A DNA stretch of 64,000 nucleotides from the NCBI RefSeq assembly GCF_002571385.2, contig NW_019217952.1:137938-201937 (forward strand). Reading direction: 5' to 3'. Below the pieces are notes generated by a model. The model was given only the letters and a program-made list of their open reading frames with translations, was not told the DNA's origin and searched no databases. This DNA comes from Stylophora pistillata. Lineage: Eukaryota. Shown piece by piece: positions 6,339-30,300 of the stretch. A program made the position numbers and the translations under genes. Every line of letters begins with the position of its first letter. Within the stretch, counting starts at the first letter, position 1.

Positions 6339-9300
6339 ATGACAAATACCGTTACAACTGACTCTGATGCCTGGTCTTCTGTCACTGAACAAAGTATTTT
6401 TCTTGACGATGGCCTTAAATTTCTTGTGGGGGTTCTCCAACCGCCTGCTATGTCTACAGAGTGCTCCACATTCGTGCAGCGCATTTCGGAGCACGAGTTT
6501 GAAACTTCTTCAAACACGGAACTTTGCCGACGCCTTCTGGATACATGTGCTCTACAACACAGCTCTTACTACAAGCTTTTTGATTATCGTCAGCGTGCTT
6601 TGCTGGGCCTCTGGCAGTCACAGAACTCCAAGTTAACAACATCATCGAAAAATTCTCGCCCTCCTGCTGTTGATCCATATCCCAAAGACGCAAAACCGAA
6701 AGTTCCTTTGCAGGATGTTTCTTTTTCGTCCCATGTTAGCCTTCTCCTTCTAGTTCCTATTTTAGAATCTCAAAGTCGGACAGATCCTTCTCTAGCTGGA
6801 CAGTGTTCAGAATTGCTACTACATTGTCTTCAAAATTGTGCTCCAAACTCTCTCGCAGCTGAGCCTACAAGCTGCATCAAAGGTTTGGCTGATTTGTTGT
6901 GCAGTTGGCTCCAACAAGCCAACGATGAAGAGGATGTCAATAGACAGGAAGAACTGGCTCGGTGTGGAGTAAAGCGAGAGAGTCTAGTTGCGGCTCTTGT
7001 CGCTTTAGCTTGCGCGAGGTAACAAATGCATGTATTATGAAATAGCAATAATTGACAGTTGACATGTTATTGATTAAATAAGTGTAGTTTGTTATTATCG
7101 GCTCAAGTTTCATCATTGCCGACCACTTGACCCACTCACACATAGGGGATTGAGTCCTCTTTTAGGGATTCACATGATATATGTAAATTCACCACCATAG
7201 TAATACTAGTCAGTACTTGAGCCTTGATTGTAACAGGTGTTTTTCATTCTAAGACATTTTCAATTATACACAGGAAGGATGCTTATACGGGAAAGTAAGA
7301 GGGGTATATTAAAAGATAGCATCTTTCAGAATGGGATCTTTCTTTTTCTCTGTCAAAACTTATTTATCCTTATCCATTAAAGCTGTCAATTTAGTTCTTG
7401 TGGGAAGTTACGCAAACAAATAAAGCAAACAAATAAAGCATAGAAGTCTTAACCTGAAAACGTTTTTCTAGCTCTAAAAAAATGAGAATTTATGAAGTAT
7501 TCGATATTGCAGTAGTGGTGGATCAGAAAGGAACTCAGTAATGAAATATGTCCATACCAAAATTGTTTTGGGTCACCAAAACTTAATTGGTCAGGTTCCC
7601 TTCACCTTAAGTTCTGGGTCAGCCACTTTTATTATTATCATGATAATTATTTTATTACACCTTTTATCAGTATCAGTATGAATGGTAGTACTAACCTTTA
7701 TGAAGACTGAAAAAGAATTATTTTGCCAAATTTATGCAAGCTATGGTGAACAAAGCCTTTGATGTACAATATACATTGCACGCCATAATTAACAAACCAT
7801 GTTACTCATTGAATTGATATAGCACTAATCATTTGCAGGCTGTCTGGGCACCTATTTATTCAAGTACTTGATGTCCTTCTGCAGCAGAGGACTCCACTGG
7901 CTAAACTACCTGTTGGTGCCGTACTGAAGAGAATGGCAGAATATGAAAGGAAAGGTTCATTCAGTGAACTTAGTGTGATACAAACTTCTCGGTTTATCTC
8001 TAGCTGGCAATTTCACACAAGTTTAACTGAATTTGATGATTCAATATACAACAGTGACCAGATTAATACTCTTGCTTGTGATGGAAAGTTCTTGTACCTT
8101 GTAAGCAGGGAAAGTAAAGGGCTTGTCAAGATTGGTACTGGAAAGTTGGGAACTTTCAGGTGAATGTAATATGCAGGGTTATTCTGCACCATGATAATTA
8201 GTTCTTTTAATAATGATGTTTTTATCTAAATGTAAATGTATAGCTGCATTTACTAGTCAGGTTTGCTTCTAAATTATTCGCATGCCCATAGGGTGAAGTT
8301 AGCTGATGAACCTGTTGATGCAACTGGTCAGATCCTATTTTGGTTTCAATAGCATGATGCAACCACACTCCCATCCATAATTAGTTGGAATACTTCTCCA
8401 TGGTGTTCTTTTGTCCCTCACTTCCTTCTAATACTGTTTGTTCCCAATTGTTGTGGCCATCTTGCAGACCAACACTAAGAGGTGTGGCAGGCTGTTTGGG
8501 GTCAAATAGTTGAATTAGGGTTGAATAGTTGAATAGATTCTTGAATGGTTGAATGGGGGTGTTGAATGGTTGAATTGGGATTGAATTGAACGGTTGAATT
8601 GCAGTTGAATGGTTGAATGAAAGAATTTTTTAATATTGCTACAAACAGCCTGCAATAAAGAGGGGCTAGGAAGTAGGTGTCCCAACAAATTTGTCTGGAA
8701 GTGTGGGAGTGTTACCACTTCCCCTGGATGGATAAATATTCCTTTACCAGTAACTCCAGCTATTGCCAGGTTTCTCTGACAGTTAGCTGTGGGGTGTACA
8801 TGTATGTACTCCTGGGTAGAACGAGGTACTATGAGAGTCCAGTGTCCTTCCCCTTGAACTCTACAGACCTGATCAGGGCTCAAATGTGGAGCTTGTAACC
8901 CTGAGAGCATGGCATGCCAACTGTACGTTAGGCCTCTGTATTGCTTACACTTCCTGAGGGAGTTTACTGAAAGTAGCTTTGTACAGGAATAATCTACTCC
9001 TGGATTGATATATTAAATAAATTCTTAAAATTACATACAGCACTTGTAAACTATCATGGAAACCTGAAAATCACTGAGGGTAGCTTACACAAACTTTTTA
9101 CTGAGATGGGACATATATCAACTCAGTCTCTGATTTGATCTTGATGTGTTTTTTGTTTTTGGTTCCTATAGGGGGGCTATATATGCCCGAAATACTGATC
9201 TAAAGAACGGATGGCTAACTTTTGTACAACAGTGGTTGTTATTTCGACCAAAGCAATTTGATAACCAACCTGCAAACTTATGTTATGTTCTGGATGTAGT

Positions 9301-12300
9301 GTCCCTGAAGGTAATTTAATCAAACTTAAATTCAGGACATTTTCAGTGTATCCTGTAATCAGTTTTGAAGAAGGTAAAAAGCTTGAGGTGAATTCCTCCT
9401 TGCAATGATGAGGCCAATGGACTTGATAAGGAAATCAAAGGCCAACTAAACACATTTTTTTATAAGATAAGAAAACTCAAAGTGAAAATTAAAATAAATT
9501 CAAGAAATGACCATAACCTAAAATCTGAAAAAGCCATTCTCCCCTCCTGAGTTTGGTTTTCTTTTTTATTAGGTCTTACAGACAATAGCATTTAGGGATG
9601 CAGGTGAAGCAGGAGATGATGAAACCCAAGCTCTGCAATGCAAAACAATACAATTACTGAGTGATCAGGTTCATTTATTTTGGCTGTGGTGTTCAAAACC
9701 ATCAGAATCTGCCCGTCAAGAGAGTAGAAAAGTGGATTTGTGGCTACAAGAATTCAAATTAGAAGCATGTGATGATAGCTTAAAAGCCTCTCCTTGTAAA
9801 GAACCAGTTGTTGTGTCAAAGAGGGAAGAACCTCCTTCTTGTTTGTCATCACCATTGCCTGTCAGACATTCACCTACAACACCTACTGGACAAAAAGATA
9901 CTGATGGTAACTCATTACCTTCTTTGGGGGTGGGGTTTCAATGCAGTCAATATCAATGATACATTTTGAACTACAGCTGAATGTCACTTTTACTTGCAAT
10001 GAGTTCTCACCACTAACAAAAACACTTATCTTGGGATCTGTTGTTACAATATAGGGTACTGAATGATAGAACAAACTGTAAATATTATTTCTAAAAGGAT
10101 TTTTTAATTCATTCATTTTCTCACCATGCTACATGTATCTCACTTCCTCTTTCAAGGCCCCAAATAATTTTTGAGCTCACCAAGAAAGTTACCCATTACC
10201 CTTACAATTCTTCAAATTTTATTTTTATAAACATACCAGGCAAAAAAGAGATAAAATTCAAGTTTTCAAGATTGTTGTGTTCTAATATTTAAAGTGTGTG
10301 ACATCTCTGACATTAAATTTGTTTGGTTATCGATGGATTTTAGATATTGTCAGCTGCGGTGTATCAATGACTACTCTGAAGCAGTCAGCCATGTTCATCA
10401 GTGGTGAAACATTGGTCATGGTAGTTCCACATCTTACCAGTCCATCTGGTCCCATACTGCTGTCACTTAGGGGACAAAAAAGTAGGGCATATAAATTATT
10501 TTGTTAACACACATGTGGACATTGATCTATTTTTTTTAGATATTAGATCTCTTTATGTAATATCTGCAAGGCTGTGCTCTAAGGAAAATTGAATGGAGCC
10601 TATTGCTCTGAAACTGTGAAATCCAGGGTGCCCTGCATATACTTTTTATGAAAAAACTAAAATTCCTGAGTCGCCCAAGAACAAAAGTAAGGCGCCAGGG
10701 GCCACCGGGCGCTGCTAGACCACAGCTTTGATCTGTGAGTACTGATACAGTATTTCTCAGTTCTTTCTAGTGAGTCCTCTTTAACTTTTAAAAAGTAGTA
10801 ATGATATTAAAGATGATAATGATAATGATTTTAGTAATAATAATTATGAGATAAAAATATAACAAAGTAAGCTCTCTGTATAATGACATGACCATCTTAT
10901 TTCTTTTTGAGAGGGAGTTGAATGAGAAACCCAATGCTTTAGACATTTTTTTTAGATCTGAATTTGTCTGGGTTTTCTTTCTTTTCTAGATCCAACGAAT
11001 TATTGTTTCTCAACTGTGGATGGTTCTTGTGTTAAGCATGAGATTGTTGTTAACTCAGCTTCACCAAAGTGGCAAGATTTAATAGCACCAGGACTAAGTA
11101 AGTACACTTCTAATAACAATAAACTTTGTAAGCAGACCTTCTATTATGCATTAGGCAGGCATCAGCTTAAGTCCTGATTTTGTTTGTAACCCCATCTTGA
11201 CCAGACTATAAAATTGACCTCTTTTCAGTGGAAAGTTCTATTAAGTGGACATGGATATTCTGATCGAATCATGTTGTAACCCAAAGTCTGTATTAGGAAG
11301 ACATTTGAAGACATTTTATTCACACTTTAAACTTGTTGGTGAACTCACCAGAGTTAATAATGGACTCACCTATCAGGAAGTTGTCATTGACAGAAGTCAT
11401 CTAAGTTTTTGGGAAACTAACATAAGTTGTTAGTAAACTTACCTAAAGAAGGTTGTTAGGAAACCAACACTGTTGTTAGGAAGCTTACTTAATTTGTTAG
11501 CAAACCAACACTGTTGTTAGGAAGCTTCCTTAATTTGTTAGCAAACCAACACTGGTGTTAGGAAGCATACTTAATTTCTTAGCAAACCAACACTGTTGTT
11601 AGGAAGCTTACTTAATTTATTAGCAAACCAACCTAAGTTGTTGGAAAACTCATCTGAGTTGTTTGCAGACCAACCAAAAGCTTACCCAACCAATAAGCAA
11701 CGTTTATTTAGGGAACGATCCCTTAGCACATCAAAACTTGAAAGATACTAGTTGTAATGTAGACTCAAAAAAATCAATTCACAGGTGTCTGTCATGATGC
11801 AGTTAACAGTAGGCTGTGGAGTTATTGCTGCAGTCATATTGGTGAATGGGTGGCTGGTGGACTTCCATCCTGCAGTCAAATATCTCAGCTACTGGGAACT
11901 TCAAGCTCTCAAAGTGCAGGTTAGGAAATAACCTTAATTTCATTTTTGGAGATTCTTTCTTGTGAGACCTGTTTAATGGACAACAACAGAAACAAGTTCA
12001 AAAAGCCAGAAGAAGAATATCATTCACTGTCATGATTTTTGTTTTTAGTAAATTATATTTTGTTTCGTTTTTATTATTTTTTTTACCAATAGCAGTAACT
12101 ACACAAGATTCAGTTGACCCAATGGAGGCTTCTTCGCTACTAGCACATCACATAACATACCTCTGTAGACGACAAAATGCTAAGACAAAAGTGGCTGTAA
12201 TAGAAAATGAGGAGATTTATTTTGGTGATACTTCTGACTTTTGTAGCATAAGGCATATCTGCAATGTTTTAAATGCTGCCATCACCAATGGCCAACATGA

Positions 12301-15300
12301 TGTCACAATAGCCATGCTAGTTGCACTACAAACTCTTTTGATACAAGTTAGTAAAAGCACAATCAAGCTTGATGACAACTCTGTTAAAGAAGTAAAGCAT
12401 CTTGTTTGGAAACTGGTTCAGTCTCCTTCTGATTCCATCGGAGCTGAAATCAAGCTCGAAGCTTCTAAGGTGTTGACAGTTGGCATGGAAGTGTTTTATT
12501 CCACTCCACTGGAGAGGAGTGCTCTGCTAATGCTTCTATTGTCCGAGGGAGAGTCTTCTTCAGACATGGCAATACTATTGAATTTTTTACTCACAAATTT
12601 AACTGAGAACTTAATGAGTCATAAACCTGAGGCATCATCTAAGGCAAGGTAAAGTCCAAAGTTATATGTGATAGCCATAAATGATAAATAGTGTAAGGAT
12701 CAAACATTTTAGAAATGAATTATTATTGAGGAGTGTAGCCAAAGACAATGACCTCATGATTTCACTTGATGACATTTGTCAGTTTTCTACTGTCTGAGAA
12801 TGCTTAATTTTAAAGAGAGAAAGGGAGTGGCAAGAATCTTCTCATCCCCCCTCCCCCTTCCTTGATTTGGGCATGGCTGGATTAAATTTTATAATGTTTG
12901 TGTGGATGAAGGTGGTAGAAAAGGGCAGGACTTTTGAAATTGAGATGAGTCTTGAAGAGTCATTGTCAGATTTACCAGTAGATGATATTTGGTTTATAGC
13001 AGCTATTACAGAATGGTAATTGAACTGAGTGGAGTGCAATTTGGGCTGAAATCATACACGTGATTCAAAATCGAACGAGCACGCAGCACAAGTTCGATTT
13101 GAAATCACAAGTATCATTTCAGACCAAAATTGCACAACACGAGGTTCAATTACTGCTTTATTACATCCATTTTGAAATCATCCAAATACAGGACTTGGTC
13201 AATTCAATTATTTTGTTGATGCAGTACTGAGCCGGTTTTTTCAACAAAAAGCGGAACCGGAAATGCTTTTACATCTTATTTTTTATGCAAAACAGAAAGA
13301 CTGATGTCATGTGTCAAAAACTCAGTCAAGCATAAAATGATGCAATTTAGAGCAAAAAATGGTGCGATTGGTGAATAAATTGCACCAATTAGAGCCAATC
13401 AGATTACAGGGACCACCAGTGATTTCAAAATGGATGTAATAAATATATTTATCTTGCATAGCTTAAATTTTGAGAGAGAGAGCCATATGGAAATCCTGCA
13501 TTGCACTCTAGAACCTGTTTCTGTATTGGTCGTGAACCAGCCAGATATATTTTGGGGTTATATAAAAAGTTGTACTGTTTCCTTAGATTTGCAGAAGATG
13601 TTGTGTTTGCTGCTCTGAGAGTATCTGTCAAAGAGTCATGTAACATGATCAGGCAGTGTAGTCATCTGGAGGATGAACCATTTTGTGCTCTGGTCACCAA
13701 ACATCCAGTTAGTCAATTATAATCTATGTTACATAATTTGTAAATAACATCTCTATAATGTCCAGCCTTTTAATGAAGATCATCTGCCTGGAAAGACAAC
13801 TTGATTGAGGATACGATTCCCTTTGAAAGAGGTGGATATTTCTAAAAATTTGGATCTGACTTTTGTAAGTTGTCTCATGGAAGTATTTTTTAGCATTCCT
13901 TGAGAGTCTGGCTGGGAGTCAAGACTGAGGAAATCAAGTTGGATCGAAGTCCAAATGTCTAAAGAAATACATAGCAAAAGTAAAATTTCAAACATTACTT
14001 GTGATTGACAGTTAAATTTCAATTGAATTAGTTATCAGTATGCGGTAAAAAGAAAACATTATCATCAAAACATTAATGGAAATGAAACCAATATATGGCA
14101 TTAAATCCTCCAGATAACAAGCCTACTATGTACTATGTACTCTTGAAAGTTTGGCAATAGCTTTGGGCTTTGGCAGTTAATAAGTTTTGTGGGGCTCTTC
14201 AGACCTTTAACTCTATGAATTGTTTAAACTGACCTGTTTTGTTTTGTATACAGGAACTTTCTCCTGTTCTGCACTATGTCACAGCTGTCTTTATTAGAAA
14301 CTGGAGAGCTTTTGTGCTCTCTGAGGAGCAGGAATCAGATCTCAAGGTTAAACATGTTTGTTTCACATTTCTGTTTCTATCAGCGAACATAAGTGTGAGT
14401 TGAGGTGCATGTTCTCTTTGGTAATGTTTCAGATGTCTTTGTAGCAAGGAATAATGATATTACTGATACTGACAGTGTCTGAATAGTCAAAGAGTTGTGA
14501 TAGTTTCATAGTTAATTTTGTGTTTCAATTATTCATCAGGTTTCTGATGATGCTGTAAAACTACATGTAGCTGAATGCCAGGAGCTCTCATTAAAAATTC
14601 TAGAAGCTTGTCAACAGGTCAGTAAGTCCACCAACACTGTCTGATTAAAGCTCAAGTTATACGAGTTAGATCCTGTGAAGGTATTAGAGGGATTTAATAC
14701 TGCGTTTACAGTACGTAAAACGTGAATGGCAAGAGTGACCACCTGACCTTATGTTTCCCTGCAGTTTCTACTTGAAAGTAATCTGTTGGCGTTTGCCGTG
14801 TACGTAAGATTTTCTTTACTTTTTCTCTTACAAAGTAGAAGTTAGTTGGCGGGAAAGGGCACAAAAACTATTTCTTGTAAGTCATACAAGGGCGCCTTCA
14901 AATCCACTTTGACGTGAGTTCACGCCAAGCTAAAGCAGCAAGGTGAAAGGTCCAGAAAGGTCCAGAAAGGTCCAAGGTGAAACGTGAAAGGGCCAGCTCA
15001 CGTTTGCTGTTCCACGTAACCGTGGTGCTAAATCTCCCTATTGTCAGGAAAACCTGACAAAATTAGGTTGGGGGAGGGGGGGGGGTGGTAACTTGCCATG
15101 GACTAGTATCTCATATAAAGGAAGTAGTGGTACCCCTTTGTTACTTTATTTCCATAAAACCAAGATTTGTTGTGCCAGTACTTTTGGCCAGTAGGGTTGT
15201 ATAACATGGATGTAGAATAGTTCATTTTCCCCACGGATAGATGTATTATTTGCAGTGATAGCTCAAATCTTATTCCAAACTGATTTTCCCCCTTTATTTC

Positions 15301-18300
15301 CCATTATTTTTAAGTTGTTAGTATAAGGTTCTCTTCATTTAGATTGAGATTGTTTCAGTAATATTTATATGTATGATCTTTGTTTTCTTTAGATTCTTGA
15401 TGTTGTTCTAGAAGTTCTCTCCAAGCTGTCAGAGGAGTGCAAAGGAAATGTAAAATCAAGAGTTGAGGGACTCGAGCATGTGATGAAGGCCACCCTTGTG
15501 GGACAGACTCTCCCTGTCCTGGCATCAGTCGTGTCCTCTGAGAGATGTCTCACACTGTCCATGGCTAAGATCTTTGTACAAAGTGTGACCAACTTAACAG
15601 TGACTGCAGCAAGGGTCAGAAAATGAATTATAACATAAGCAAAGTAAAGCGCGCGCTCTGATTGGTCAATTTAGCGTCCCCCATTTGCCCATGGGTGTAC
15701 GCTGCTGACGTGAGCAAATGCAAAGACTATTTTTCCGCGCGCGCTTGTTTTTTCTGGTCGCGTAAGATTTGTTAAATAAAAGGGAACTCTTTAGCTACAA
15801 TGTATCAATGTTATGTTATAAAACAAATGGTAAACACCACAGCGTACACTATTGAGTTATGGATGCACTTGGGAGGTTTGCTAAGCACTCAAGAAGCTAG
15901 AGTCGCTCTCGGCTATCGCCTCGAGCGACTCTTACGCTTCTTTCGTGCTTAGCAACCTCCCGCGTGCATCCATAACTCAATAGTGTACGCTGTGGTGTTT
16001 ACCATTTGTTTTATAACATAACATTGATACATTGTAGCTAAAGAGTTCCCTTTTATTTAACAAATCTTACGCGACCAGAAAAAACAAGCGCGCGCGGAAA
16101 AATAGTCTTTGCATTTGCTCACGTCAGCAGCGTACACCCATGGGCAAATGGGGGACGCTAAATTGACCAATCAGAGCGCGCGCTTTACTTTGGTTATGTT
16201 ATAATTTTTTCTTCTATTAAAAGATCTATTTCTTTAGAGCTTATTAAAAAAAAAAAAAAAGTTGATAATAAAACTAATTCAATAGAAACAAGCATAATAA
16301 TAAAATGTCCTCTATTTAAAATTATACCCCAACTCCCCAATAAAAATAAAATAATAATAATAACTAAGTATTTATAATACATTTTAAATAATTTAAATAT
16401 TGAACGTATTCATTTAAACCAACTCCCTTTATCACAATTGGCATAAAAGAATGATTTGCCCCACAAATTTCAGAACATTGTCCAAAAAAAACCCCGGCTC
16501 GTTTTATAAAAACACCAGTTTGATTTAGACGACCCGGAACCGCATCAATTTTTAACCCCAAAGAAGGCACTGCAAAAGAATGTAAAACATCTGCCCCAGT
16601 AACTAAAAATCTTATATGTGTTTGAATAGGAATTAAAAGTTTATAATCAACTTCTAACAAACGATTCTCTCCAGAAACTAAATCCGAAGTAGGAATCATA
16701 TAAGAATCAAACCCTAACGTATCCCCTTCATAATCAGAATATTCATAGGATCAATATCATTGATGCCCAATAACTTTAATTGTCAAAGCTGGAGAAATAA
16801 CCTCATCCATTAAATATAATAATTTAAGAGAGGGCAATGCAATAAAAATCAATATAACAGCAGGAATAATCGTTCAAACAATTTCTAAAAATGTACCATC
16901 GATTAAATGACGATCATAAAACTTATTTTTAAAAGATTCAACAAAAAGTCATAAAACAACAGTAACTATAATAATTAATAAAAACATAACTTGGTCATGA
17001 AAAAAAACAATTTCTTCTACAATAGGATCCCCAACATCTTGAAACTCTAAAAGTCAAGTCTCTGGACTGTCCGAATAATAAAGATGATTAAACCAGAGAA
17101 CAGACAACCAAGCCAAAACATTTATAAAATATCTAAAAAAAGTAAAAACAAAAAGATTTTGCATTAAAGAAGTTTTTATGAGCCTCATCAATAAATACAT
17201 AAATATAAAAATAATCAAACCACATCGACAAAGTGCCAGTATCAACTCGCGGCCTCAAACCCAACATGTTGACGACGAGTAAATTGATTAGAGAGTAAAC
17301 GTAAAAAACAAATAAAAAGAAAAGTAGTACCAATTATAACATGTAGTCCATGAAACCCTGTCGCAACAAAAAAAGTGGCCCCATAAACAGAGTCAGATAA
17401 AGTAAAAGGCGCCTCATAATATTCAAATGCTTGCAACCCCGTAAACATAACACCCAAAAAAAGAGTTAAAAATAAAGCAAGTTGAGCCTCTTTTTTTAAA
17501 CCACAGAGTATTGCATGGTGCGCCCATGTAACCGTTGCCCCAGAACTTAATAATACAGCAGTGTTTAATAAAGGAACAGAAAAGGGATTTAATGCAACAA
17601 TTCCTTGTGGAGGCCAAACAACTCCAAGTTCAACAACCGGTGCTAAACTACTATGAAAAAAAGCCCAAAAAAAAGAAAAAAAAAACAAAATTTCTGAAAG
17701 AATAAATAAAATCATACCATATTTAATCCCTTGTTTTACAATTAAAGAATGGTGACCTTGAAAAGTTGATTCTCGTATAACATCTTGTCATCAAACAAAC
17801 ATAACTCCAACAACAACCAAAAGCCCCAAATATAAAAAAAAACTAAACCCATAATGAAAAAAAACCACTGCACCAACAGTAATAAAAAAAGAGCCAATTG
17901 CTCCAACAAAAGGCCATGGAGAAGGCTCAACTAAATGATACGAATGAAACTGCATCAAGAGCCAGTTCCCTCACTCTTACTATGTTACGACTTACAGCCT
18001 ATTTCTGGGCTGGCGACGGGCTATTTGTACTAACATTGTTTTCACGTTCATTGAAACGCACTACTTTTCAATTACTATTAAATCCAACTTCATTATCTTA
18101 TTTTAAAAACAATCCGAACCCCTCCTTTTCTAAGAGAAAAATGTAGCGCGCCTAACCCCGAAATATAAGGGTCATAATACCTGACTTCAACCTTGATAGG
18201 ATTAAACCCCTTTTTGTCTCAAACAGAAATTGACGACGGCCATGCAACACCTGTTAATAAATTCAAACTTCGGTAAGGTCTCTCGCGGATTATCGAATTA

Positions 18301-21300
18301 AGCGACGCGCTCCTCTAATTAACAACCGAACAGCCAAGTCTTTTGAATTTCAATCTTGCGACCGTACTACTCAAGCGATATTCTTTTACTGTATAGACTA
18401 CCAGGGTCTCTAATCCTGTTTGCTCCCAAAACCTTCGTATTTAAGAAAAAAAAAATAAATTATTTTCATATAAAAAATTCTTTTTTTCATTCCAACATTT
18501 CACAATTACGAAAAAAATTCTATTTATTTTTTTTTTTTTAAAAATCCTTAACACGCTTTTTGCTTTTTATTAAAAAATAAATCCTTAAGTTTTACCGCGT
18601 CTGCTGGCACTTATATTTGACAGATTTTTTTTATCCCACCTATGTCTTACTTTCGTATATTACATAAAATCCATTACTGCTGCCAAAGGTTTTCTTTTGT
18701 TTCAGTGAAAATGTGGTTAAACTATGCATCTTCAAAAAAAGAATAAAAAACTTTTCTTTTTTTAATACAACAAATAAAAAAAATTTTTTTATTTTATCCT
18801 CACCTGTTCGCATACACTAGCATGTATAACCTAGACTAAATATTTTTTTTTCCCTAAAACCCCAGGACTAACCCCCTGGGCTAAAAACAAGACTATTTTT
18901 AATTAAATCAATAATAGGAAAAGGCACAATCCCCCCCCCTAAGATAATTAAAAGAAAAGGAAAAATTACAAAAATCTCTCGTCGACTTAAGTCTCTATTA
19001 AAAAGTAAATAATTAGATCCCCCCCCCCTTTTCCAATCTCTCTGGTGCTTTCAAGTTACACCAGCTACATAATGGTTGAATCACGAGGAGCTATTCGAGT
19101 TACGAACAGGCAATTGATTCTAGTTTTGCATCTGATTAGTGGAGAGGGTGGTACGAGTTTCCTTGACTAATGGAATATGTCTTCCAAATCATTGTCCTTT
19201 GTTTTTCAGGAGCACGAGGAAAAACCTCCTAACCTGTGCTTCTTTGCTTTTCAGGAGCACGAGGAAAATTCTTCTAACCTATCGTTCTTTGCTTTTCAGG
19301 AGCACGAGGAAAATTCTTCTAACCTATCGTTCTTTGCTTTTCAGGAGCACGAGGAAAAACCTTCTAACCTGCCGTTCTTTGACGACTTGTACCTAAACCT
19401 CTCGGTACTCACCCACAGCCTGCTGATGGTTAGGTACCAGGGCCCTGCAAACACGGAGGCCGAAGATGCTTGCCAGCATTTACTCGACTCTAAACTATTA
19501 CAAAGGTGAGAAGACTATTTGAAAAGTACTTTACTCCGTGTTAAAGGCGTGTTACCTTGATGGAGAAAGTTAAAAAGTGGTATAAGCCTGACTGAATATG
19601 ATTCGATGTGTTATCGTCCACTTTTCTTTATATGCAAATATAGCATACTTCTTTTTCTTGTGCTTCTTGGAAGGGCCCACTCGAAATCCTCTTTAAAAAG
19701 TTTTTTTCCTCAAGATTTCCATACCTCCTTGTGTTGAAGTAATAGGGACCTTAAGCAGTCAGGACGGCAACGCCATGGAAGACGTCAATTAAAAAATGAA
19801 TTTCTACTTTTAATTAGAATTTAGAAAATGGCTGCATGTGTTTACCATCTCATACGGCGCCACAACTCAGACTCAACATAACGTATTAAAGTAGCGTTGA
19901 GTTGTAAATGGAAATTGAAATAATTTGCCGTTGCGGTTTCGGTTCGCAGACGACGCAAATTTTGCTGATTTTACGTTATCGTTTTGCAAAGGACGGCTGA
20001 GAAATGTACTAAGTTTTAAAATGCACGTGCTGAGCTATTGTTCTGCTAATTAGATCTATTGTTTTTCCACGTTCTCGTTGCCGTGCCGTCGTGGTTTGCT
20101 TAAGGTCCCTAATATATCTCACAACGCCGTACATTACAAATCAACACAGTATTTCTATCCTCACATAACAATTAATGTGATGTAACTGCGGATGTAACTG
20201 CATCTTCGGAGCCCCTGGTATACCCAATCCCCACATTACCCCAGAACCTTGATAGTTGGGAGATACTCAGGGGTTTGGAGCTTTGACACCGACCTTGTTA
20301 GCCTCGGTGACCGCGGTACGGGACTCCCCTTTTACCCCTGAAACTTGAAGTTACACCCAGAGACTGATAGCTTGGAGGTTGTAGATTTGACGCCAGCCCT
20401 GTTAGGNGAATTAATTTGATGGCCTGCTCCCAGTTGGCTTGTTAGCTCAATTGGTAGAGCGCTGCACTAGTATCGCAGAGGTCAGTGGTTCGAATCCCGT
20501 ACAGGCCTGAATTTTTTTCAGGTCTGATTTTCACTATTGATTAAATAGTGCTTTACTGCGAAGGATCGTGCACATATACGTTAGTTCTTTTATTTTGGTT
20601 TTTATAGGAGTAGGCGGCTCTTCCAGATAAGCGTGCGGGCTTACTATCAATGGATAAAGTACTTAGTATCCATCTCACTGTTTTTAAGTGTGGTGCATTT
20701 CTCTATTTTTGTTTCACAGGCCAAGAGTAAGGAGCTTGAGTTGTTGTGTTCACTTAAGAATGTTGAGTTTGATCCCATAGAGCAGGAAAAATCGGTGGGC
20801 AAACTGATGTGAGTAGAAGAATGTGATCTAAGATAACAATTTGTTATTCCTGTTTTAGATCTTGAAGATAATTAGTAAATTAAGGAGAAAGACACCAAAA
20901 GGATTTGTGACAGGTCCCTACACTGTGACACGAACTTTTGTATCTCCTCTGTCCCACAAGAAACAGATGAGCATCCTGAGCATGCTTCTCGCACCTGACA
21001 GTTGTCTTAGATGGCTGTTAGGCCTACGAAGTGTGCCAAAGCAAACCAGGATCTAAGTGAAGTTTTATAGCGTCTTGCCATGAGAAGACTTTAATTTAGA
21101 CCTGGAACAATTCATCACGTTGATCTAATGCTAATTCTAACCCCCACCCCCACCCCCACGTCAATAACATAACTTTTAACCCTTGAACTCCTTAGAGTGA
21201 TTGGTTTTTAAAGTCCCCTTACATGTAACGGTCACGAGAATAGAAAGTCACTGATTGTCAAACAAATTCTCCCGGTCAGTACCAGAAGAAATGTAGAGAG

Positions 21301-24300
21301 GACAGTGTGGAGAATATCAATGCCATTGTAACGGTTATCTCTTGTTTGGAGAGATGCGGCCTAATGATGTTCCCTTGTCGGCCGCGTCACTGTGTTGACA
21401 GGCAGTAAAGGTACCGTGGGCGCTTAACTCTTCACTGTTGTTTTGTATTTCTTAACGTCTTCTTCTCAGAGAGTGGCTGGATACAGAAGCAAAAGCAGAG
21501 CCCCAAAAAGCTAAGAGTTGTCTGGACGGGATGCCAGTCACCAAGAAGTTTCTGTTTTCTATTATGGAGTGTGCAGAGCTGCTTTGCAATGTGACTATTG
21601 AGGCGAGCGGCAAGAAACCTCTACCAGAGAGAAGTATCTCGCACTATAGCGTTGCATCGCATCACGATCAACAATCCAAACAAGGTGCGTTTTTTATCCG
21701 TTGTAATCGTCCTTGTCCTTAACTCTCATCGGTATTTTATGTTTTCTTTTTATACTAGTCACCTCCAAGGGCGAGAACCTTGCTCCTTCTTCGCCACTTC
21801 TCAGTCGGTCATTTTCAGAGCCATCCACCTTGGATCAATCCACGTCACTTCAGGAAGGCATACATGACGTACGTAGATTGCAGCGCTGGAGAACGAACGT
21901 TCAAAAGAAGCACAGTCGGGCTTCATTTGAAAATCAGACGCATTCTGATGCAAGAACTTTTGTTTCAACTGTGGCCGAGATTTTCACTTTTATTGGCAGC
22001 GATCCAGATAAAGCTGTAAGTAGGGGATTTCCTTGTGAACACCAAGGGTACTGCATTCGTTGATAAACTGTTGTAACAGTTGAAAAGCATTTTGTTTGTG
22101 TTGTAAAGTGAATTTTAGTTAAAACAAGCAAACTTCATGACGTTGGCGGAAGCTCTATAGACTGATCACTGTTTACAGCGAAGTGAAACTACTGCTGTCT
22201 TCAGTTACTTTAGACATTCAGTTGGAAATTGTGAGAACAGTAAGCGTATTCATTCGCGAGCATTTATGATCGGGTAATAATGGACACTAAGTGTTTTGGC
22301 ACAGTAAAGAAGGGCAATAGTTCATTGATCCCTGCCGACAGACTAAGCCACATCTACTCATAGGCCATTCTGATTTCAATTTTTTTTCCTGGTATTTACG
22401 GAACTTATTTTCCTTACTCTTTGTCAGGTGACCTGTTCCAGTTTTCTCGCTGCAGCTCGCGTCCGTAATAAACGAGGGTTAGACCGTGTACAGGCTCTCC
22501 AATTTATGATAGAACTGGTTACAGTTTGCTCCCGACTTGGTTTGCATTTGCCTTATGTAATGTCTGCCGTGGCCTCCATTCTTGGTCTAGGTCCAAGGTG
22601 AGCTTCGTTATATTTCCATTTACCGACTAAGGGCTCAGTGAGTCTTGAAGCATGACTCGTGACACTTTCTCAGCCCTCAGTTGAAGACCTTACCGAACCT
22701 TATTATCATTTGAAGGGGTCCTTCTGTAGGCGTTAACTTCGCATTTGTTTAAAAAAACAAGATCTGCCCATTCTGACTCTGCAAACCCTCTTGATGAAGT
22801 CAAAGTTGTCTTGCATGAATCCACTGCACACTTTCCTTAATATTTCTTGAAACCATGCCTACGAAGTGTGCATCCTTATACATCCGTGTTTTTTTTTTTT
22901 TTTCGTTTCAGGACTGAAGAGCTTAAATGCGGAGGCATGGTGCGAGAGGTTCGCGACATGTTCTCTGCTGCGGTCCAAGCCGTGGTCCAGGGGGCGTCTT
23001 CTGAGCCTGCAGTGTATCGTGACAGCGTATTAGTGCTCTCTGTCTGTCCGTTCTCGTGGCACGAGGAGCGCTGTGTAATGAGGAGCGGCTTGGTGTATCT
23101 ACTGGATAAACTGTGTTCTATGAGAAGCAAAAAGACTGACATAGCAGTGAATCTGTCCGCTATGGCTTGGGCGGGTTTTCAGGTGCTTTTGGATCTGATA
23201 GTTCAGTGGGAGAATGGTAAAGGTGAGAAGTTAAACTTCACTTATGCTGCGAATATGCCTCCGATGGCTATAGTTTCCTCTGCAGCCATTTTTTGGGCTC
23301 GTCGTGTACCACGCTTTCTCTCCTTCTCCCCCTCCCCCCCCTACACCCCCTACACCCCCTTTCAGCTTTAGCACTTGGAGAACAATGTTGGCGACATCTT
23401 TCGGCTCAAACAATTATCGTGAGGCAATGCCACCATACATTTGCTGAAGATACCTTGTATAGGATCGGATAAGAAATTTACAGTCTTGGGGTACTATTAG
23501 TTGTAATGAACTTTGACATGGAATGAAAAAACCAAGTTACAAGGGATGGAGAGAAGGTTAAACCACCCATATCTTGCCAATCAGCTGCAAATTTTGTGTT
23601 AAACTGCACAGTGGTTTCCATTTCTCTGTTTAGATTTCCGCCCTGGTGCTATAGAATGGTCTGGCTTAGCCCATCAAGTTTCTAGTTTGTTGTCAAACTA
23701 CCTCAGCTGTGTACTGGAGGAGAGCCGTAAGGACAGTGCTGCTGCTAGAGACGCTCTGCAATACGTCATGGAACTGTTACACGGAATTAGCAGGTTCAGT
23801 TGATTACTCGGTTAATTACTCAAAACCTGAGGTTACAGCAAGTGTCAGTTGGGTCTCGTTAGTATTCCGGTACTGCGATGGTTTTTGTTTATCACGTATG
23901 ATGGGTGGTCTCGAAAACTCGCGCCACTTTACCAGCGATCGCGCTCTCCTTTCGCGGAGGGAGCGTCAAAAGTAAACAAACTAATCGCAGGTTGTTTTCT
24001 ACCCTCTTAGCTGATCAAAGGCAACAAGATAAAAGATTGGCCTTGCGAAATTCCATCGAACGTACCTTTATGACCAAATATGTAACCACTCCCCCCCAAA
24101 GACACATTTTAAAACTATTTTAACTCTTAGATTCACACATCCCGATATAAATACTTTATCCAGGGAACACGTGGGGTTAATAAAAGAACTTCTCATCAAA
24201 TGAATGTTCTCATGAAATGATAACAGATGATAATATACAAGGAATAAGAACCTACGGATTAAGCTGACTGAAGTATCACAAAGTGATTAAGATCACTCAT

Positions 24301-27300
24301 TGTGTTTTTTCTTCTGGGAATTAGGAGTAAACTTGGAGAAGGAATTCTTCGTGAGCCACGCACCATCTCCACCCTCCTATCGCTCCTACTGGATCGCCAA
24401 GCGCCTCCTAAACTAATATTAATCGTGCTCAAACTCTGTTGCTCGGCCTTGCCACTAATGAGCGCCAAGACCTGCGAGGAAGTGGAGTTACCCTCCTCTG
24501 CCAAGTTTTATTTTGGAGGGAAACATGAAGAGAGCCTAGAAGGGAGCTCAGTGTTCAGAGTAGCTAAACTGCTTCTTGCTAAGCTGGGTGACTTTGTGCT
24601 GCCTTCACTGAATCCGGGAAGCGAAGAAGATCAGGAGGAAGATATGGACGAATATGACGACAGTGAGATCGCAGACAAGGATGGAGACCGCATGTGTTTG
24701 TATGTACATAAAAGAGATGACCAGCCGGCGCATGAAGTGGTTCAAAAGTTTCTCAGGTACAGTTTGAAAATTAAGTGTCAAAAGAAATCCAGGATTCTAA
24801 TAGAAAATGTGTTGATGCAACGAAACATTCTCAATTTCAACAATGGCCTTGGAAGAGTTACTAACTAGTTACTAACTAGATTGCCTGCCTAACAACATTT
24901 GTATTTCCCATTCAGTACGAGCAGTATGGGCTTTATCTTTATCGTTGGACAAGGTTCGGAGTTGGAACGCGCGGTCAAGCTCGACCAAGAGCTGACTGAG
25001 TTCGGTCGCGGCGTTCTTCTCACCGACACTTTGTCAGCGTGCTTAAAGAAGGCGGCTGAATGGGCTCAGACAGGACTTGTGGTCAGTGTTGGTCCTGCTG
25101 CCCTGTTGGAAAGAGGTGGAGGGCAAAGGAAACCTTCAGAGGGTTCCGGAGACCCGGAAAGAGTCTGTAAAGCCAGAAACAGCCGTCTGTCAAGGTTTGT
25201 CTGATTTACTTTGCAGTCCAGGAGTCATTACTCGCCAACCCACACATTGACAATTTATCCATTCTTAAAGGAGGCATGGCGGCAGAATGCAATATGAAGA
25301 ATTTCTAGGTCACTTTACAGCCAGATAAAGCGTTTATCAACCGTTAAGATACCTCCGTTCTGTTGCATTTCCTTTCTCAGTCGAATTAGTAACACTCGCA
25401 CATCAACGCCGAAAGCGAAATCCGTTGCTTTTTATTTTCCTCCCAAACACTGTAATATTTCCATGTTCGCATTTTCACTTCCTGCAGGGTTCTGCAAAAT
25501 AAAAAAAAATTTTGTAATTGGCTTCCTTTTATTACCTGCCAATGGCTTTATTTGTTAAAATGTTTGTTTTTTTACAGGACCGAAACCAGCCGTCCATTCA
25601 TGAGTGGTCAAGTAGCTCACAGCATGGCTTCTGAGGTAATCTCTCTGTTGCACAGCTTACTAACGCATTCCACTTCTGAGACCGCTAAGATATGGGCTTC
25701 TTCCGTGCGGGATGTGTTGTGTGAGGCGCTTAATTATGTGCCCGGCTTGGTTAGGACTCTGGAAGCGGAAGGAAGGATCTTATCAGATGGCGTCCAAGCG
25801 GCCTCCCAAGAACTGGAGCCTGAAGTTGATGGGAAGACTGGTCATGAACAAGAGTGGTTTTTCAAAGCTAGGAATATTATGGCGTCTCTCTGTGCTCTGG
25901 GTGGTTTTGGCCAAAGTGTCCACTCAGGGTGCACAGTTCAGGTAAAGAATTCAGATTGGAGCCGTAACTCTCCCTTCTAGCTTTTATATATTTCGATCAA
26001 AGGTAGACATGAGAATTTAGCGTTTTATTAGGATAGCACCAGTGTACTGGATAGAGTATCGCTCCACCTCACTCTTGGATTTGAAGATGAAGGGGTTATG
26101 ATGTTACGAGATTATCTCATTTAACTGAGACGTCAATAAAAGATAACACAAAACTGAGTAGGCGGATAATGCTGTGATGTGCTTCCAAGCTGTTTGCAGA
26201 AGCGTTTTAAAATTGTCCCCCGCTAATGCTAAAGAGTTGGAGTCGTGATGGCGTAAAAGTTAGCGCGCTGAGTCCGGTTGTTCAAAGAGCGAATAACGCT
26301 ATCCAACGGCTAAATCGCTAACCAGCGGATAAGTGTTACCAAAATGTACTGCGCTATCCACCGGTTAGAGATTTATCCAGCAGATAGTGCTATCCATCCT
26401 TTGAAAAACCGGGCCTGGACTCTAAAGGTCCGTAAGGTCTGAGCTTAGGCCTGGGACTTTGTGTCACGTTCTTGTTCATTTCCACAATGACTCTCTCCAC
26501 CCAGGAGTTTAAATGGATACCAATGAAGTGTCATTACTCTCCTTGTTAGCCCAATCAAGTTTGAATACTAATGAATCTATTGTAGTTTGATTTCTTGTCA
26601 ATGCCTTGAGCATGCGATTTACCGGCTGTTAGTCTCTTACAGATAACTGGAGAAGATATGGTGCGTACACCAGGTGAAGTTGTCAGTGTGTCCGAAAGGC
26701 AGGGTGTGGCTACGGTACTTCTGGACAAGGGAGGGGAAACCTACAGCGATAGGGTACAGGAGATACCACTGGCAAGGCTTAAAGTTGCGAACGCTCAGGT
26801 ATAGCTCCTTTGTTTGAAGACTTTCCTAGCATTTAAACTTTCTTGCTTCACAAGGCCTTAATTCAAAGCGATTTGATAGAGTTTCCTACTTTTTACTGCG
26901 CAGCTTTTTTCCAAAGTTATCAATAGTTTAACGGTCTTCTTGATCCGCGCGCTTTCAAGCTTTTAGTAAAAAAGTTCCTTTCCATCACTAGGTTGTGTTT
27001 CTTAGCGAATTGTCTATGGAAGAACAAACTGTTGCTGCTTTACTTACTATTTTAAATTCGAAAGAAGTGATTCTTGATAAGCTTTTGGAATCGGATCAGA
27101 GTGAGAAAGTTGTCCTCACCTCACCTGCAGCAAGAATACTGGCGGAAATGAAAACAAGGTAAGTGAAGAAGTTTTCTTCATTTCGTGTTTAAGGTGTTTG
27201 TAGTTGTGCTGGGCCCAGTCAACTAGGATACAAGAAATTGTACATAGAGTAGTCCTCTATTCGTTGGCTGTATGTAACTACATTCCGTGTATTAATATGG

Positions 27301-30300
27301 CCATCCGTTATTGATAACCATGATGTATCGCATCTGCCAAACATGTAATTTAATATTTGCTTTTCCACCAAGGGGTTCCGCATGCGTCAACTTTTAATTG
27401 TTTTTCTACCATACTGCACCAATTAGAGTTCTTTTAAATCGTGAACTCGTTACTCGTGTGTGTGAAACGAATTTCTTGCTTAAATTGCTTCTATGTGATA
27501 TAAAGACCAATTATTGAGTGACGCTACTTAGGCAGAGACTTCTTTTCAGTGCTACGTATTAACTACTTCTATTTGATCTTGTAATTTACAGAGCAAGTAT
27601 GGTGTTATCTTGCCAGATACATGACTCATCCTTTATCACGGCCATTTTAAAAAACCCGTCACTCGAACTCATCTCTAGATTATCAGGGGAGTGCGATCCA
27701 GGCTTAAGACTCCCTGTAATACAGAAGCACTGCCAGCAGCTGCGAAAACTCTTCAAAGACTTCGTCAAACCTTCCGAGCCACCCAAGAAAGTAACTAGGA
27801 GCGAAAAACAGATAGTGCTCGACGGAAGTCGGGTCTTCCCTCCCGTGCGGGGATGCGTTTTTACCGAGGGGCACACCTGTGTCCACTTCATGGCCGACCC
27901 TACGGCAGGTTTCGGACTTCCAAGGGGGACGTTTGTGTATGCAAGTTCTCCATTACCTCAAAAGGTCTGTTAGATTATAAATTGCGTGCATGTCTGTATT
28001 ATCCAATGTGCTTGCATTTACTTTGAGTCCTCACTGTCCCTTGGTCGTATTTTGCCTTTGTTTTGTGGTTAGTGTGGTTATGGTGTTGCGTCATGGTAAT
28101 CATTCATTAACCTCTACGCCGAAGCCATCATCTTCCGTTCCGTTACACCGCGCATATGTTTATTATCACGAGCCTCTCGTGTGAACGAATTTCAAACGAT
28201 GAAGTTCTACGTGTGAAGTACAATTGTTAACCTAGCTAAGTACATAAAGTACTTTTGAAGTTATGTACACTATAGAGAGCAGAATGGAAAATCGCCGTTC
28301 AATTGAAGTGGAATATTTCCTCGTTTTTCGTCAGCAGTTCTGTTGAACCGCCCGGCTAACTTCAGCTTTTTTTTAAAGGCACCATCCTTTTACTGGGAAG
28401 TCGAACTTTGCTCCCTGGGAGACAAGGAAGATCAAGAACCGGGACCTTGTATTTCTGTGGGATTTGCCCCTAGGACAGATGTGCTTGCCAGTGGCTGGGT
28501 AAACCCTGTGGGCTCATGCCTCCTACACAGGTTTGCTCCATTTTAATTACTTTTACGTCTCGTGGGGTGCTGTTACCTAAAGCAACCTTTCGACGCAGTT
28601 CGAAAGAAACAAGAGTACATAACTCTTCATAGTAAACAAAGGTTCCTCCTAAGAACAGACAACGAAGGAACCTTGATATGTTTGACTTAACAGGGGGGCG
28701 CAGGCACCTTATAACCCCCTCCCCTCTTAGCGACGCCTTTGTTCAGCTACAAGTGGGTTTCGCTTCTTCTTTTACTGAAACAAAGGTTCCTCCTAAGAAC
28801 AGACAACGAAGGAACCTTGATATATTTGATTTAACAGGGGGGCGCAGGCACCTTATAACCCCCTCCCCTCTTAGCGACGCCTTTGTTCAGCTACAAGTGG
28901 GTTTCGCTTCTTCTTTTACTTAAACAAAGGTTCCTCCTAAGGACAGACAACGAAGGAACCTTGATATATTTGATTTAACAGGGGACACAGGCACCTTATG
29001 ACCCCCTCCCCTCTTAACGACGCCTTTGTTCAGCTACACGTGGGTTTCGCTTCTTTTACATTTTTTAAATGTTTTTCCTTTGACCTATCATACTTGTGAA
29101 AACTGAATGTTAACAGCAATGGCCGTGCAGTGCTCTACAGAACAGGTGGGCTTCTACAATGGAAAACTGTCTCGTTGAATATTGTGATGAAAGAAAAAGA
29201 CGTTATAGGGTGCGGATATAAGAGAGCTGAAGATCAGGCCGATAAAGGAACGGTGTATTTCACCTGCAATGGCGAACGGTTAGCTGAAAGCCTAGACGGG
29301 GTGCAGAGTGGTCTGTGGCCTGTACTTCACATTCAGAAGAAGGTAACACATCTTAAACCACTAAAATCACTTGCTTCTAATTTCTTCCTCAAAGTATCAC
29401 CCTCAAATCAAGTGGAAAGGTCACCAGAGTGAAGCAAATAATCACCAATGTAAGAAGTTCCCCATTATTAAACAAATTCTCTTTCTTAGAACCATAGGAA
29501 AGCTTCTGTACGATTCGTTCATATATGCTCCGACTGGGCCCAAAGGGTATCTTTCCTAGTTCTAAAATATTTTCTGGAAGGATAAGAGCAAACCCGTTCT
29601 TGTGCAAATAAGTTTTAATGCGCTGGAGTGGTGAATTAGTATTTTTTTTATATATATATATATATATATTGTAGGTTTCGCACATACTCTATTTGAAAGA
29701 GGCAGGCTTTGGGCGTCTCGAAAATGGTCTATTTGTATACAGTTTGCAGAAAATGAAACTTGGATTTAGATATGAATTTCATACGTAACCTTATGATCCC
29801 TGAAGAGAATATCCTTCGAGGTCTAAGGACAATCGTCGAGGCACGCTCCCAGCTGAGCCGGATAATCAGAAATCATTTGGAGTAAATTCGGGAAATAATT
29901 ACAAAGCCGTTCTGTTAGACTCTCATTGCCAGGTTCTTGATGCAATTTTAATCAGATCGACTACTTTACTGATTGTTTTCAACCCTGGGTTATGCAAATG
30001 CCTTACTTTACTCTCTATTCCCCCAGAACGTGCGTGTTCGCGTGAACTTTGGTGCTCGGTCGTTCTTCTACGCAGAGGGTTCCAAACACCGTTTGGCGGC
30101 CGACTTGTGGAGTGACTCGCTAGTGGATGTCAGACAGGGATTCACTGAGCTTCCATTTGCTCTCGAACCTGATCAGGATGAGGATATGAAAGGAAAAGAG
30201 CCTCCTAAAGTTTGTAAACCCTCTCCGCCTAAACCTGCACCTCTAAATATCCCGAATGACTCAGCTAAAGGTTAGTTAATGGTTCGTGGAGTTCGCATCT

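What the first reader, a model, noticed from the sequence alone, without database searches (positions are those of the whole stretch)
16212..19028. Intact 2.8-kb block of coral mtDNA inside a nuclear spliceosomal intron
Seen: nad4(3')-12S-cox3-cox2-nad4L(5') lie antisense to HECTD4. cox3 and cox2 are fully open in code 4 with no visible frameshift despite many homopolymers. Both ends break mid-gene, with no target-site duplication, and the right end falls in a poly-C run. Established: in scleractinian mitogenomes these genes lie inside the nad5 group I intron, and anthozoan mtDNA evolves slowly. Inference: a very recent, possibly polymorphic NUMT, or a mitochondrial contig wrongly joined in. 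If real it could confound 12S/cox barcoding.
Basis: partly seen in the sequence, partly recalled or inferred. Interest (0 to 1): 0.8.

Follow-up and report, generated by a model that had tools for sequence, protein, structure and literature searches.

The report
Mitochondrial DNA misplaced in coral scaffold
The 2.8 kb of mitochondrial DNA inside the coral HECTD4 gene is most likely an assembly error, not a nuclear insertion: it is letter-for-letter the colony's own live mitochondrial sequence and sits where two real HECTD4 exons, stranded on a small unplaced scaffold, belong.

Summary
Window 16212-19020 (minus strand) carries the nad4 3' end, 12S rRNA, cox3, cox2 and the nad4L 5' end. cox3 and cox2 are open in code 4. 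The block lies antisense within HECTD4, whose identity I confirmed.

It is not a decaying nuclear copy:
- Its 1.2% difference from the assembly's mitochondrial contig (C5513) is haplotype divergence: 12 synonymous against 2 non-synonymous coding changes.
- In four public runs, contigs at mitochondrial depth match the window version with no differences over 16368-19020. They run on as ordinary mtDNA past both ends.
- Public mitochondrial contigs are 100% identical over 16212-19020.
- The left join follows a MITE-like repeat with more than 2000 first-look matches in the genome. The right join is a C10 run.
- No contig covers the right join in the two runs whose depth can be accounted for.

The decisive point is synteny. 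A relative coral's orthologous locus and a 4420-aa bird HECTD4 both place two conserved exons exactly in this slot. Those exons are absent from the window. They sit on unplaced scaffold C3200, whose first contig starts inside the same repeat and ends in a C run.

Verdict: a mitochondrial contig wrongly placed in a scaffold gap (about 0.85). A genuine, very young replacement allele remains possible (about 0.1). Interest is low, but the error damages the HECTD4 gene model.

The parts
16212..19020 (-). Block of mitochondrial DNA (2809 bp), identical to the live mitochondrial haplotype; read as a misplaced mitochondrial contig
   Evidence: 98.8% identical to the assembly's own mt contig C5513. 100% identical to public mt contigs L038 and L041-L043 where they overlap. 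High-depth contigs of 4 runs match it with 0 other letters over 16368-19020 and continue as mtDNA beyond 16208 and 19020.
18868..19020 (-). nad4 3' end, cut mid-gene
   Evidence: Code-4 frame ending ...SLVFSPGG plus stop. Matches the end of the nad4 open frame of C5513 (8644-10116).
17943..18875 (-). 12S (small-subunit) rRNA
   Evidence: Rfam SSU_rRNA_bacteria, 263.3 bits, E 5.8e-81. The ends are approximate.
17176..17955 (-). cox3, complete, open in code 4
   Evidence: Translation. The 157-aa part is Pfam COX3 in the public mt contigs. 5 synonymous and 1 non-synonymous differences from C5513.
16364..17164 (-). cox2, complete, open in code 4 (start codon inferred)
   Evidence: Translation. Pfam COX2 in public mt contigs. 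5 synonymous and 1 non-synonymous differences from C5513.
16212..16382 (-). nad4L 5' part, cut mid-gene
   Evidence: Open frame starting MYYKYLV.... The same start is called as the 99-aa Oxidored_q2 gene in public mt contigs.
16205..16211 (.). Seven letters (TTTTTTC) at the left join that belong neither to the repeat nor to mtDNA
   Evidence: Comparison of the window with live mt contig L038 and with other repeat copies.
19019..19028 (.). C10 homopolymer at the right join. It is nuclear sequence; mt identity ends at 19020.
   Evidence: mt contigs stop fitting at 19020 (loose ends). A nuclear-depth contig of X16 fits from 19019 rightwards and has 7 letters on the left that do not fit the mt block. 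C3200 contig 1 ends ...CTTCCCCC.
15626..16204 (.). MITE-like palindromic repeat, long form. The short form ends at about 16010, which is where C3200 contig 1 departs from the window.
   Evidence: >2000 first-look candidates and 90 scored matches at 94-100% (forward-strand copies 98-100%). Termini. Short-form ends and C3200 1-90 = window 15921-16010.
15352..15623 (+). Last stretch conserved with the relative coral before the slot (HECTD4 exon region)
   Evidence: 82% DNA identity to L046 11990-12264, 87% at protein level in one frame.
19339..19506 (+). First HECTD4 exon after the slot
   Evidence: 86% amino-acid identity to L046 15393-15560. Aligns to bird HECTD4 residues 1153-1241.
6357..44848 (+). 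HECTD4 gene span in the window
   Evidence: tblastn of P0080 (named HECTD4 by NCBI) is colinear over residues 16-4419. Residues 1063-1186 are the exception: they hit C3200 instead. HECT Pfam hit at 44720-44830.

Best explanation
The block is not part of the nuclear chromosome. It is a 2.8-kb piece of the sequenced colony's own mitochondrial genome that the short-read assembly put into a scaffold gap of the HECTD4 locus. The gap lay between a high-copy MITE-like repeat and a poly-C tract, two places where short-read contigs break. The real sequence for that gap is about 1.1 kb and holds two HECTD4 exons, which align to residues 1063-1186 of the bird protein. It was left out and survives as the first contig of unplaced scaffold C3200. 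A third exon on C3200's second contig maps, by synteny, further right between window 19559 and 20684. The apparent 1.2% 'decay' arises because the mitochondrial contig attached to the assembly (C5513) is a different haplotype from the colony's own. Shown: identity to live mtDNA, the nature of both joins, the missing exons, their location on C3200, and the absence of a laid contig across the right join. Inferred: how the pipeline made the error. That paper describes khmer depth normalisation, ALLPATHS-LG, then three rounds of SSPACE and GapFiller.
For: (1) Identity to live mtDNA. Contigs at mitochondrial depth fit window 16368-19020 with 0 other letters in X1, X16 and X13; X5 differs at only 2 sites. 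Depths are about 486x against 17x nuclear in X1, and about 8900x against 100x in X16. All these contigs run on as nad4L and nad4 sequence beyond 16208 and 19020. Public mt contigs L038 and L041-43 are identical over 16212-19020 where they overlap.
(2) The differences from C5513 are 12 synonymous to 2 non-synonymous (P about 3e-6 to 1e-4 under neutrality). X5, L040 and L044 share two of the C5513 states, so these are live haplotype variants.
(3) The left join abuts the end of a repeat with more than 2000 first-look matches. The right join is a C10 run.
(4) Depth bookkeeping for X1 and X5 leaves no contig over 19021-19034. The nuclear-depth flank contigs stop fitting at 19035 (X1) and 19019 (X16), and their remaining letters do not fit the mt block.
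(5) The relative's locus L046 is colinear with the window. Between the matches to window 15352-15623 and 19166-19559 it carries two conserved exons that are absent from the window.
(6) Those exons exist once in this genome, on C3200 (E 1.5e-36). C3200 contig 1 starts inside the same repeat (bases 1-90 = window 15921-16010), departs where the repeat's short form ends, and ends in a C run. The ordered pieces map colinearly on L046.
(7) Bird HECTD4 aligns to the window over residues 16-4419, except residues 1063-1186, which hit C3200.
(8) Four other mt blocks sit in nuclear scaffolds, none overlapping another on the mt map. Two are near-identical to the live haplotype and one abuts a single N.
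Against: Both joins are written without N, and 7 letters at the left join belong to neither partner, as filler at a real end-joining site would. Only assembled contigs (Logan) could be laid, not raw reads. Such contigs always break at sequence shared with high-depth mtDNA and drop rare variants, so a missing junction contig is weak evidence. The left join could not be assessed at all. It is not certain that X1 is the source sample. Some other mt blocks in this assembly have clean joins in unique DNA, and one (C821, 165 bp) looks more diverged, so true NUMTs may exist here. C3200 could in principle be the other haplotype of a heterozygous locus.
Confidence: 0.85

Rival explanations
1. A genuine, extremely young NUMT allele. 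A fragment of mtDNA was captured at a double-strand break next to the MITE end and replaced about 1.1 kb of HECTD4, including two exons (459 nt, an in-frame loss of 153 codons). It is carried on one haplotype of the sequenced colony. C3200 represents the normal haplotype.
For: No N at either join. There is a 7-letter filler on the left and a 2-letter overlap (CC) on the right, as at end-joining sites. In X1 the right-flank contig has lower depth (6.45 against about 17) and a different left continuation, which hints at structural heterozygosity. The repeat family is young (copies 98-100% alike), so it may still cause breaks.
Against: No contig carries the right join in X1 or X5. In X16 a full-depth flank contig does not continue into mtDNA. 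There are zero differences in 2809 bp. C3200's second contig (third exon) also interleaves with the window further right, which points to left-out contigs rather than an alternative haplotype. At least two other zero-divergence mt blocks occur in the same assembly and few if any old ones, an age profile not expected for steady NUMT gain.
Confidence: 0.1
2. A fixed, real NUMT lying in an otherwise intact HECTD4 intron, as the title says.
For: This is how the scaffold reads.
Against: The 'intron' lacks two conserved exons that both a relative coral and bird HECTD4 place there. An independent sample at about 100x (X16) does not continue into mtDNA at the right join.
Confidence: 0.02
3. An older NUMT that has diverged 1.2% from the mitochondrial genome. 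This is the naive reading of the comparison with the assembly's own mt contig.
For: 30 substitutions and 2 one-base deletions (4 BLAST gap openings) against C5513.
Against: The live mtDNA of four runs and several public contigs carries the window's states, not those of C5513. Coding differences are 12:2 synonymous.
Confidence: 0.01

Closest known systems
NUMTs (nuclear copies of mitochondrial DNA) in cnidarians
   Same: A stretch of mtDNA with several genes, cut mid-gene at both ends and written inside nuclear sequence. Exonic and intronic mt fragments carried together within NUMTs were reported for Nematostella (PMC3716686).
   Different: Reported scleractinian NUMT content is tiny: 1 NUMT of 86 bp in Acropora digitifera, and 24 of up to 1836 bp in Nematostella (PMC3716686). 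This block shows no divergence from live mtDNA, no junction support, and displaces real exons.
Organelle contigs mis-scaffolded or gap-filled into draft nuclear assemblies
   Same: The block is identical to the sample's organelle genome. Its joins fall at a repeat end and a homopolymer. The true sequence for the slot is left as a small unplaced scaffold. The published pipeline used depth normalisation followed by iterative SSPACE and GapFiller (PMC5730576).
   Different: Both joins are closed without N, which is less usual for a pure scaffolding error. The exact step that made the join is not known.
Scleractinian mitochondrial gene order (genes inside the nad5 group I intron)
   Same: The order nad4, 12S, cox3, cox2, nad4L matches C5513 and the public pocilloporid-type mt contigs.
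   Different: Nothing differs. The block is ordinary live mtDNA of the sample's haplotype.

Membership tests
NUMT | Sequence of mitochondrial origin | tested here: met
   98.8% identical to C5513 and 100% to live mt contigs; 12S by Rfam; cox2 and cox3 open in code 4.
NUMT | Physically joined to nuclear DNA, with junctions present in reads of the organism | tested here: not met
   Right join: no laid contig over 19021-34 in X1 or X5, and the X16 flank contig does not continue into mtDNA. Left join: not assessable, because repeat depth swamps it. Only contigs were available, not raw reads.
NUMT | The nuclear locus is otherwise continuous around the insert (flanks adjacent in the empty state) | tested here: not met
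   Two conserved HECTD4 exons that belong between the flanks are absent from the window and lie on C3200.
NUMT | Evolves as a nuclear pseudogene, with differences from live mtDNA that ignore coding constraints (typical, not obligatory for young copies) | tested here: not met
   0 differences from the live haplotype over 2809 bp. Differences from C5513 are 12 synonymous to 2 non-synonymous.
Misplaced organelle contig (assembly artefact) | Identical to the organelle genome of the same sample | tested here: met
Misplaced organelle contig (assembly artefact) | Joins fall at sequences that break short-read contigs | tested here: met
   End of a repeat with more than 2000 first-look matches and a C10 run.
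Misplaced organelle contig (assembly artefact) | The true sequence of the slot exists elsewhere in the same assembly | tested here: met
   C3200 carries the missing exons. It begins in the same repeat and ends in a C run.
Misplaced organelle contig (assembly artefact) | No read pairs or long reads of the source sample support the joins | not testable with these tools
   Only Logan contigs could be laid.
HECTD4 (host gene) | Colinear full-length similarity to a named HECTD4, with a C-terminal HECT domain | tested here: met
   P0080 (NCBI name: putative E3 ubiquitin-protein ligase HECTD4, a bird) aligns over residues 16-4419. PF00632 hit at window 44720-44830.

The most novel reading that the evidence does not exclude
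The block is a real, very recent NUMT allele. It was captured at a break beside an active MITE end, replaced two in-frame exons of HECTD4 on one haplotype of the reference colony, and is one of several simultaneous zero-divergence mtDNA insertions in this coral lineage.
Probability: 0.1. Interest if true: 0.6.

Novelty: not a real feature. Interest (0 to 1): 0.15.

Why it matters
As a biological finding it is ordinary: there is no good evidence for a NUMT here. It matters in practice for anyone using this reference genome.
- The HECTD4 gene model on this scaffold lacks at least three exons. Two of them (153 codons) are replaced by mtDNA.
- Mitochondrial reads will pile up on this nuclear scaffold.
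- Surveys of NUMTs in corals that use this assembly would count this block, and probably the blocks on C500, C638 and C2, as large young NUMTs.
- The mitochondrial contig attached to the assembly is not the haplotype of the sequenced material. It differs by 1.2% over this stretch. The misplaced blocks preserve the real one.

Tried and rejected
- A scan of metagenome contigs for the unique right-flank 30-mer found nothing.
- Exact-product look-ups found nothing on record for the open frame that spans the left join (62 aa) or for two open frames in the right flank.
- The look-up of the 206-aa HECTD4 exon returned only a 932-bp contig.
- Pfam gave no family for the HECTD4 exons tested or for the C3200 exons. 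PDB sequence search and the protein atlas gave nothing for the 482-aa exon.
- A second, more distant coral locus (L049) did not reach the slot within 10 kb, because a retroelement and another gene are nested there.
- The anchor window 19096-19171 to L046 13674-13749 was rejected as orthology. That stretch belongs to a dispersed repeat with dozens of copies.
- Joints that link the repeat to 18479 or 19741 were set aside as other repeat copies or low-complexity matches (short side 20-22 letters).
- The five mt blocks do not overlap on the mt map, but this would happen by chance with P about 0.12, so it is only mild support.
Exons were searched one by one by reference.
- No N was filled. I state only that, by synteny, the third C3200 exon maps between window 19559 and 20684.
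Full report
**What is in the sequence**

Window 16208-19026 aligns on the minus strand to the 17,177-bp mitochondrial contig of the same assembly (G000:C5513). Identity is 98.8%: 30 substitutions and 2 one-base deletions (BLAST counts 4 gap openings). Rfam finds small-subunit rRNA at 17943-18875. In genetic code 4, cox3 and cox2 are open. The block begins in nad4 and ends in nad4L. The composition changes at both ends.

**The 1.2% difference is not decay**

I laid the contigs of four public runs from four studies on window 15300-20300. Contigs at mitochondrial depth fit the window's version of the block with no other letters over 16368-19020 in X1, X16 and X13. Depths are about 486x against 17x for the nuclear flanks in X1, and about 8900x against 100x in X16. 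X5 differs at two sites. These contigs do not turn into the nuclear flanks. Their loose ends at 16208 and 19020 read on as nad4L and nad4.

Public mitochondrial contigs, found through the cox3 product, are 100% identical to window 16212-19020 where they overlap (L038, L041-L043). Only 16211, 19021 and 19024 differ, which fixes the true ends of the mitochondrial stretch.

Of the 14 coding differences from C5513, 12 are synonymous (P about 3e-6 to 1e-4 under neutrality). X5, L040 and L044 share two of the C5513 states. So the block is the live haplotype of the sequenced material, and C5513 is another haplotype.

From memory, not tested: 17,177 bp is the length of the published Stylophora pistillata mitogenome from a different lineage. 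The genome paper types its colony as clade 4 (PMC5730576).

**The joins**

The left flank, 15626-16204, is a palindromic MITE-like repeat. It has more than 2000 first-look candidates in the genome. The 90 scored matches are 94-100% alike, and forward-strand copies are 98-100% alike. Seven letters (TTTTTTC) follow that belong neither to the repeat nor to mtDNA. At the right end, mitochondrial identity stops at 19020 inside a run of ten C. Unique nuclear sequence follows.

In X1 and X5 the depth of bin 18974-19140 is fully accounted for by the mitochondrial contig ending at 19020, plus in X1 one flank contig starting at 19035. Nothing is laid over 19021-19034. In X16 a contig at nuclear depth (95.9) fits 19019-19232 and has seven further letters on the left that do not fit the block.

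The left join cannot be judged, because repeat depth swamps it. Only assembled contigs were available, so this is evidence of no support, not proof of absence.

**The decisive evidence: the slot belongs to two HECTD4 exons**

The word search with the 206-aa exon led to a 40-kb contig of a related coral (L046). It is colinear with the window at 78-82% DNA identity over the conserved pieces.

Between its matches to window 15352-15623 and window 19166-19559 it carries two conserved, splice-site-bounded exons, at L046 13098-13337 and 14367-14602. Neither has a counterpart anywhere in the window.

The first of these exons has a single good match in this genome, on the unplaced 2059-bp scaffold C3200 (E 1.5e-36). 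C3200 also carries the second exon and, after an N gap, a third.

C3200's first contig starts inside a copy of the same repeat: its bases 1-90 equal window 15921-16010. It leaves the window's sequence exactly where the repeat's short form ends in other copies (...CATTTGTTAA). It ends ...CTTCCCCC, in a C run. So it fits the slot that the mitochondrial block occupies, from the repeat to the C tract.

Placed in that order, the pieces of window and C3200 map colinearly on L046. The third exon falls between window 19559 and 20684. I filled no N and built no joined sequence.

**Confirmation from a full-length protein**

An exhaustive search with the second C3200 exon found full-length proteins of 4100-4400 aa. 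The best of these, P0080, is named putative E3 ubiquitin-protein ligase HECTD4 by NCBI (a bird).

It aligns colinearly to the window's plus strand over residues 16-4419 (window 6357-44848). The exception is residues 1063-1186, which hit C3200. On the window these fall between the matches at 12571 and 19261, that is, at the block. A HECT domain hit lies at window 44720-44830.

But the 'intron' holding the block is an artefact: the scaffold lacks 153 codons there, and they exist elsewhere in the assembly.

**Context in the assembly**

Four more mitochondrial blocks sit in nuclear scaffolds: C500 (1.7 kb), C638 (1.35 kb), C2 (1.05 kb) and C821 (165 bp).
- The C500 and C2 blocks are nearly identical to live contig L038. 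The C2 block abuts a single N.
- None of the five blocks overlaps another on the mitochondrial map (chance P about 0.12).
I confirmed only that block's identity to the live haplotype, not the missing exon (one search was uninformative).
- The published pipeline normalised read depth with khmer. It then ran ALLPATHS-LG, transcript scaffolding, and three rounds of SSPACE and GapFiller with all libraries (PMC5730576).

Normalisation removes the depth signal that normally keeps mtDNA apart. That this produced the misplacement is my inference.

**Verdict**

The best explanation is a mitochondrial contig wrongly placed and sealed into a scaffold gap (0.85). The main rival is a real, very young allele in which captured mtDNA replaced the two exons on one haplotype, with C3200 as the other haplotype (0.10). 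Three things speak for it: the N-free joins, the filler letters, and an odd low-depth flank contig in X1. Three things speak against it: the missing junction contigs, the full-depth non-mitochondrial continuation in X16, and the interleaving of C3200's second contig further right. A fixed NUMT in an intact intron, or an old diverged NUMT, is contradicted by the data.

Known cnidarian NUMT surveys found one 86-bp NUMT in Acropora digitifera, and 24 of up to 1.8 kb in Nematostella (PMC3716686). A 2.8-kb zero-divergence NUMT would therefore have been exceptional, and the artefact reading removes that. The practical consequences are a broken HECTD4 model, spurious 'NUMTs' in this reference, and a mitochondrial record that is not the colony's own haplotype.

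Noticed in passing
window 15626-16204 (short form 15626-16010); copies e.g. L006-L010: A MITE-like palindromic repeat. The long form is about 579 bp and the short form about 385 bp, ending ...CATTTGTTAA. Termini are TTATAACATAACC...GGTTATGTTATAA. There are more than 2000 first-look candidates; forward-strand copies are 98-100% alike, so it is very young. In some copies (L006, L010) the flanks are reverse complements of each other, so the palindrome extends beyond the element.
   Followed up: partly
G000:C500:48841-50559 (L017), C638:67012-68359 (L018), C2 about 87937-88990 (L027), C821:28175-28339 (L028): Four more blocks of mtDNA inside nuclear scaffolds. The C500 and C2 blocks are near-identical to live mt contig L038, and the C2 block abuts a single N. 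The C821 block (165 bp of cox1) has 5 differences from C5513 and may be a true older NUMT. These probably have the same kind of origin as the block studied here.
   Followed up: partly
G000:C5513 (L003+L004) against window 16212-19020: The mitochondrial contig attached to the assembly is not the haplotype in the reads of four runs. It differs at 27 substitution sites and 2 one-base indels in 2.8 kb (excluding the three junction positions), mostly synonymous or in 12S.
   Followed up: yes
G000:C3200 (L047) and window 19559-20684: The unplaced scaffold C3200 holds three HECTD4 exons (326-559, 883-1107, 1778-1944) that are missing from the window's scaffold. By synteny the third maps to an interval of the window that contains a single N (20407). 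No N was filled.
   Followed up: yes
window 19177-19400: A unit of about 45 bp is repeated four times, each copy ending in a ttttcag acceptor-like motif, just upstream of and running into the HECTD4 exon 19339-19506. The relative L046 has one unit. This could be duplicated 3' splice sites or an in-frame repeat expansion.
   Followed up: no
G000:C1037:562-1193 (L030): A cox1-like sequence only 67-83% identical to the coral's cox1, on a small contig. It may be another organism's mitochondrion (a contaminant or associate).
   Followed up: no
G000:C92:413043-413996, C676:3282-4499, C145:505309-506816 and others: Nuclear tandem arrays 70-77% similar to mt 6212-6353, with short pieces similar to mt 4552-4605. 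This may be T-rich low-complexity resemblance or an old mt-derived satellite.
   Followed up: no
window 58085-58963 (+): An open frame with a eukaryotic cobalamin-binding domain (PF01122, E 5e-19), downstream of HECTD4.
   Followed up: no
run X13 ('organism B'): A run labelled as a different organism holds a 6.4-kb mt contig identical to the block, plus low-depth pieces of the repeat, but none of the unique flanks. This looks like host DNA carried over into another organism's library.
   Followed up: no
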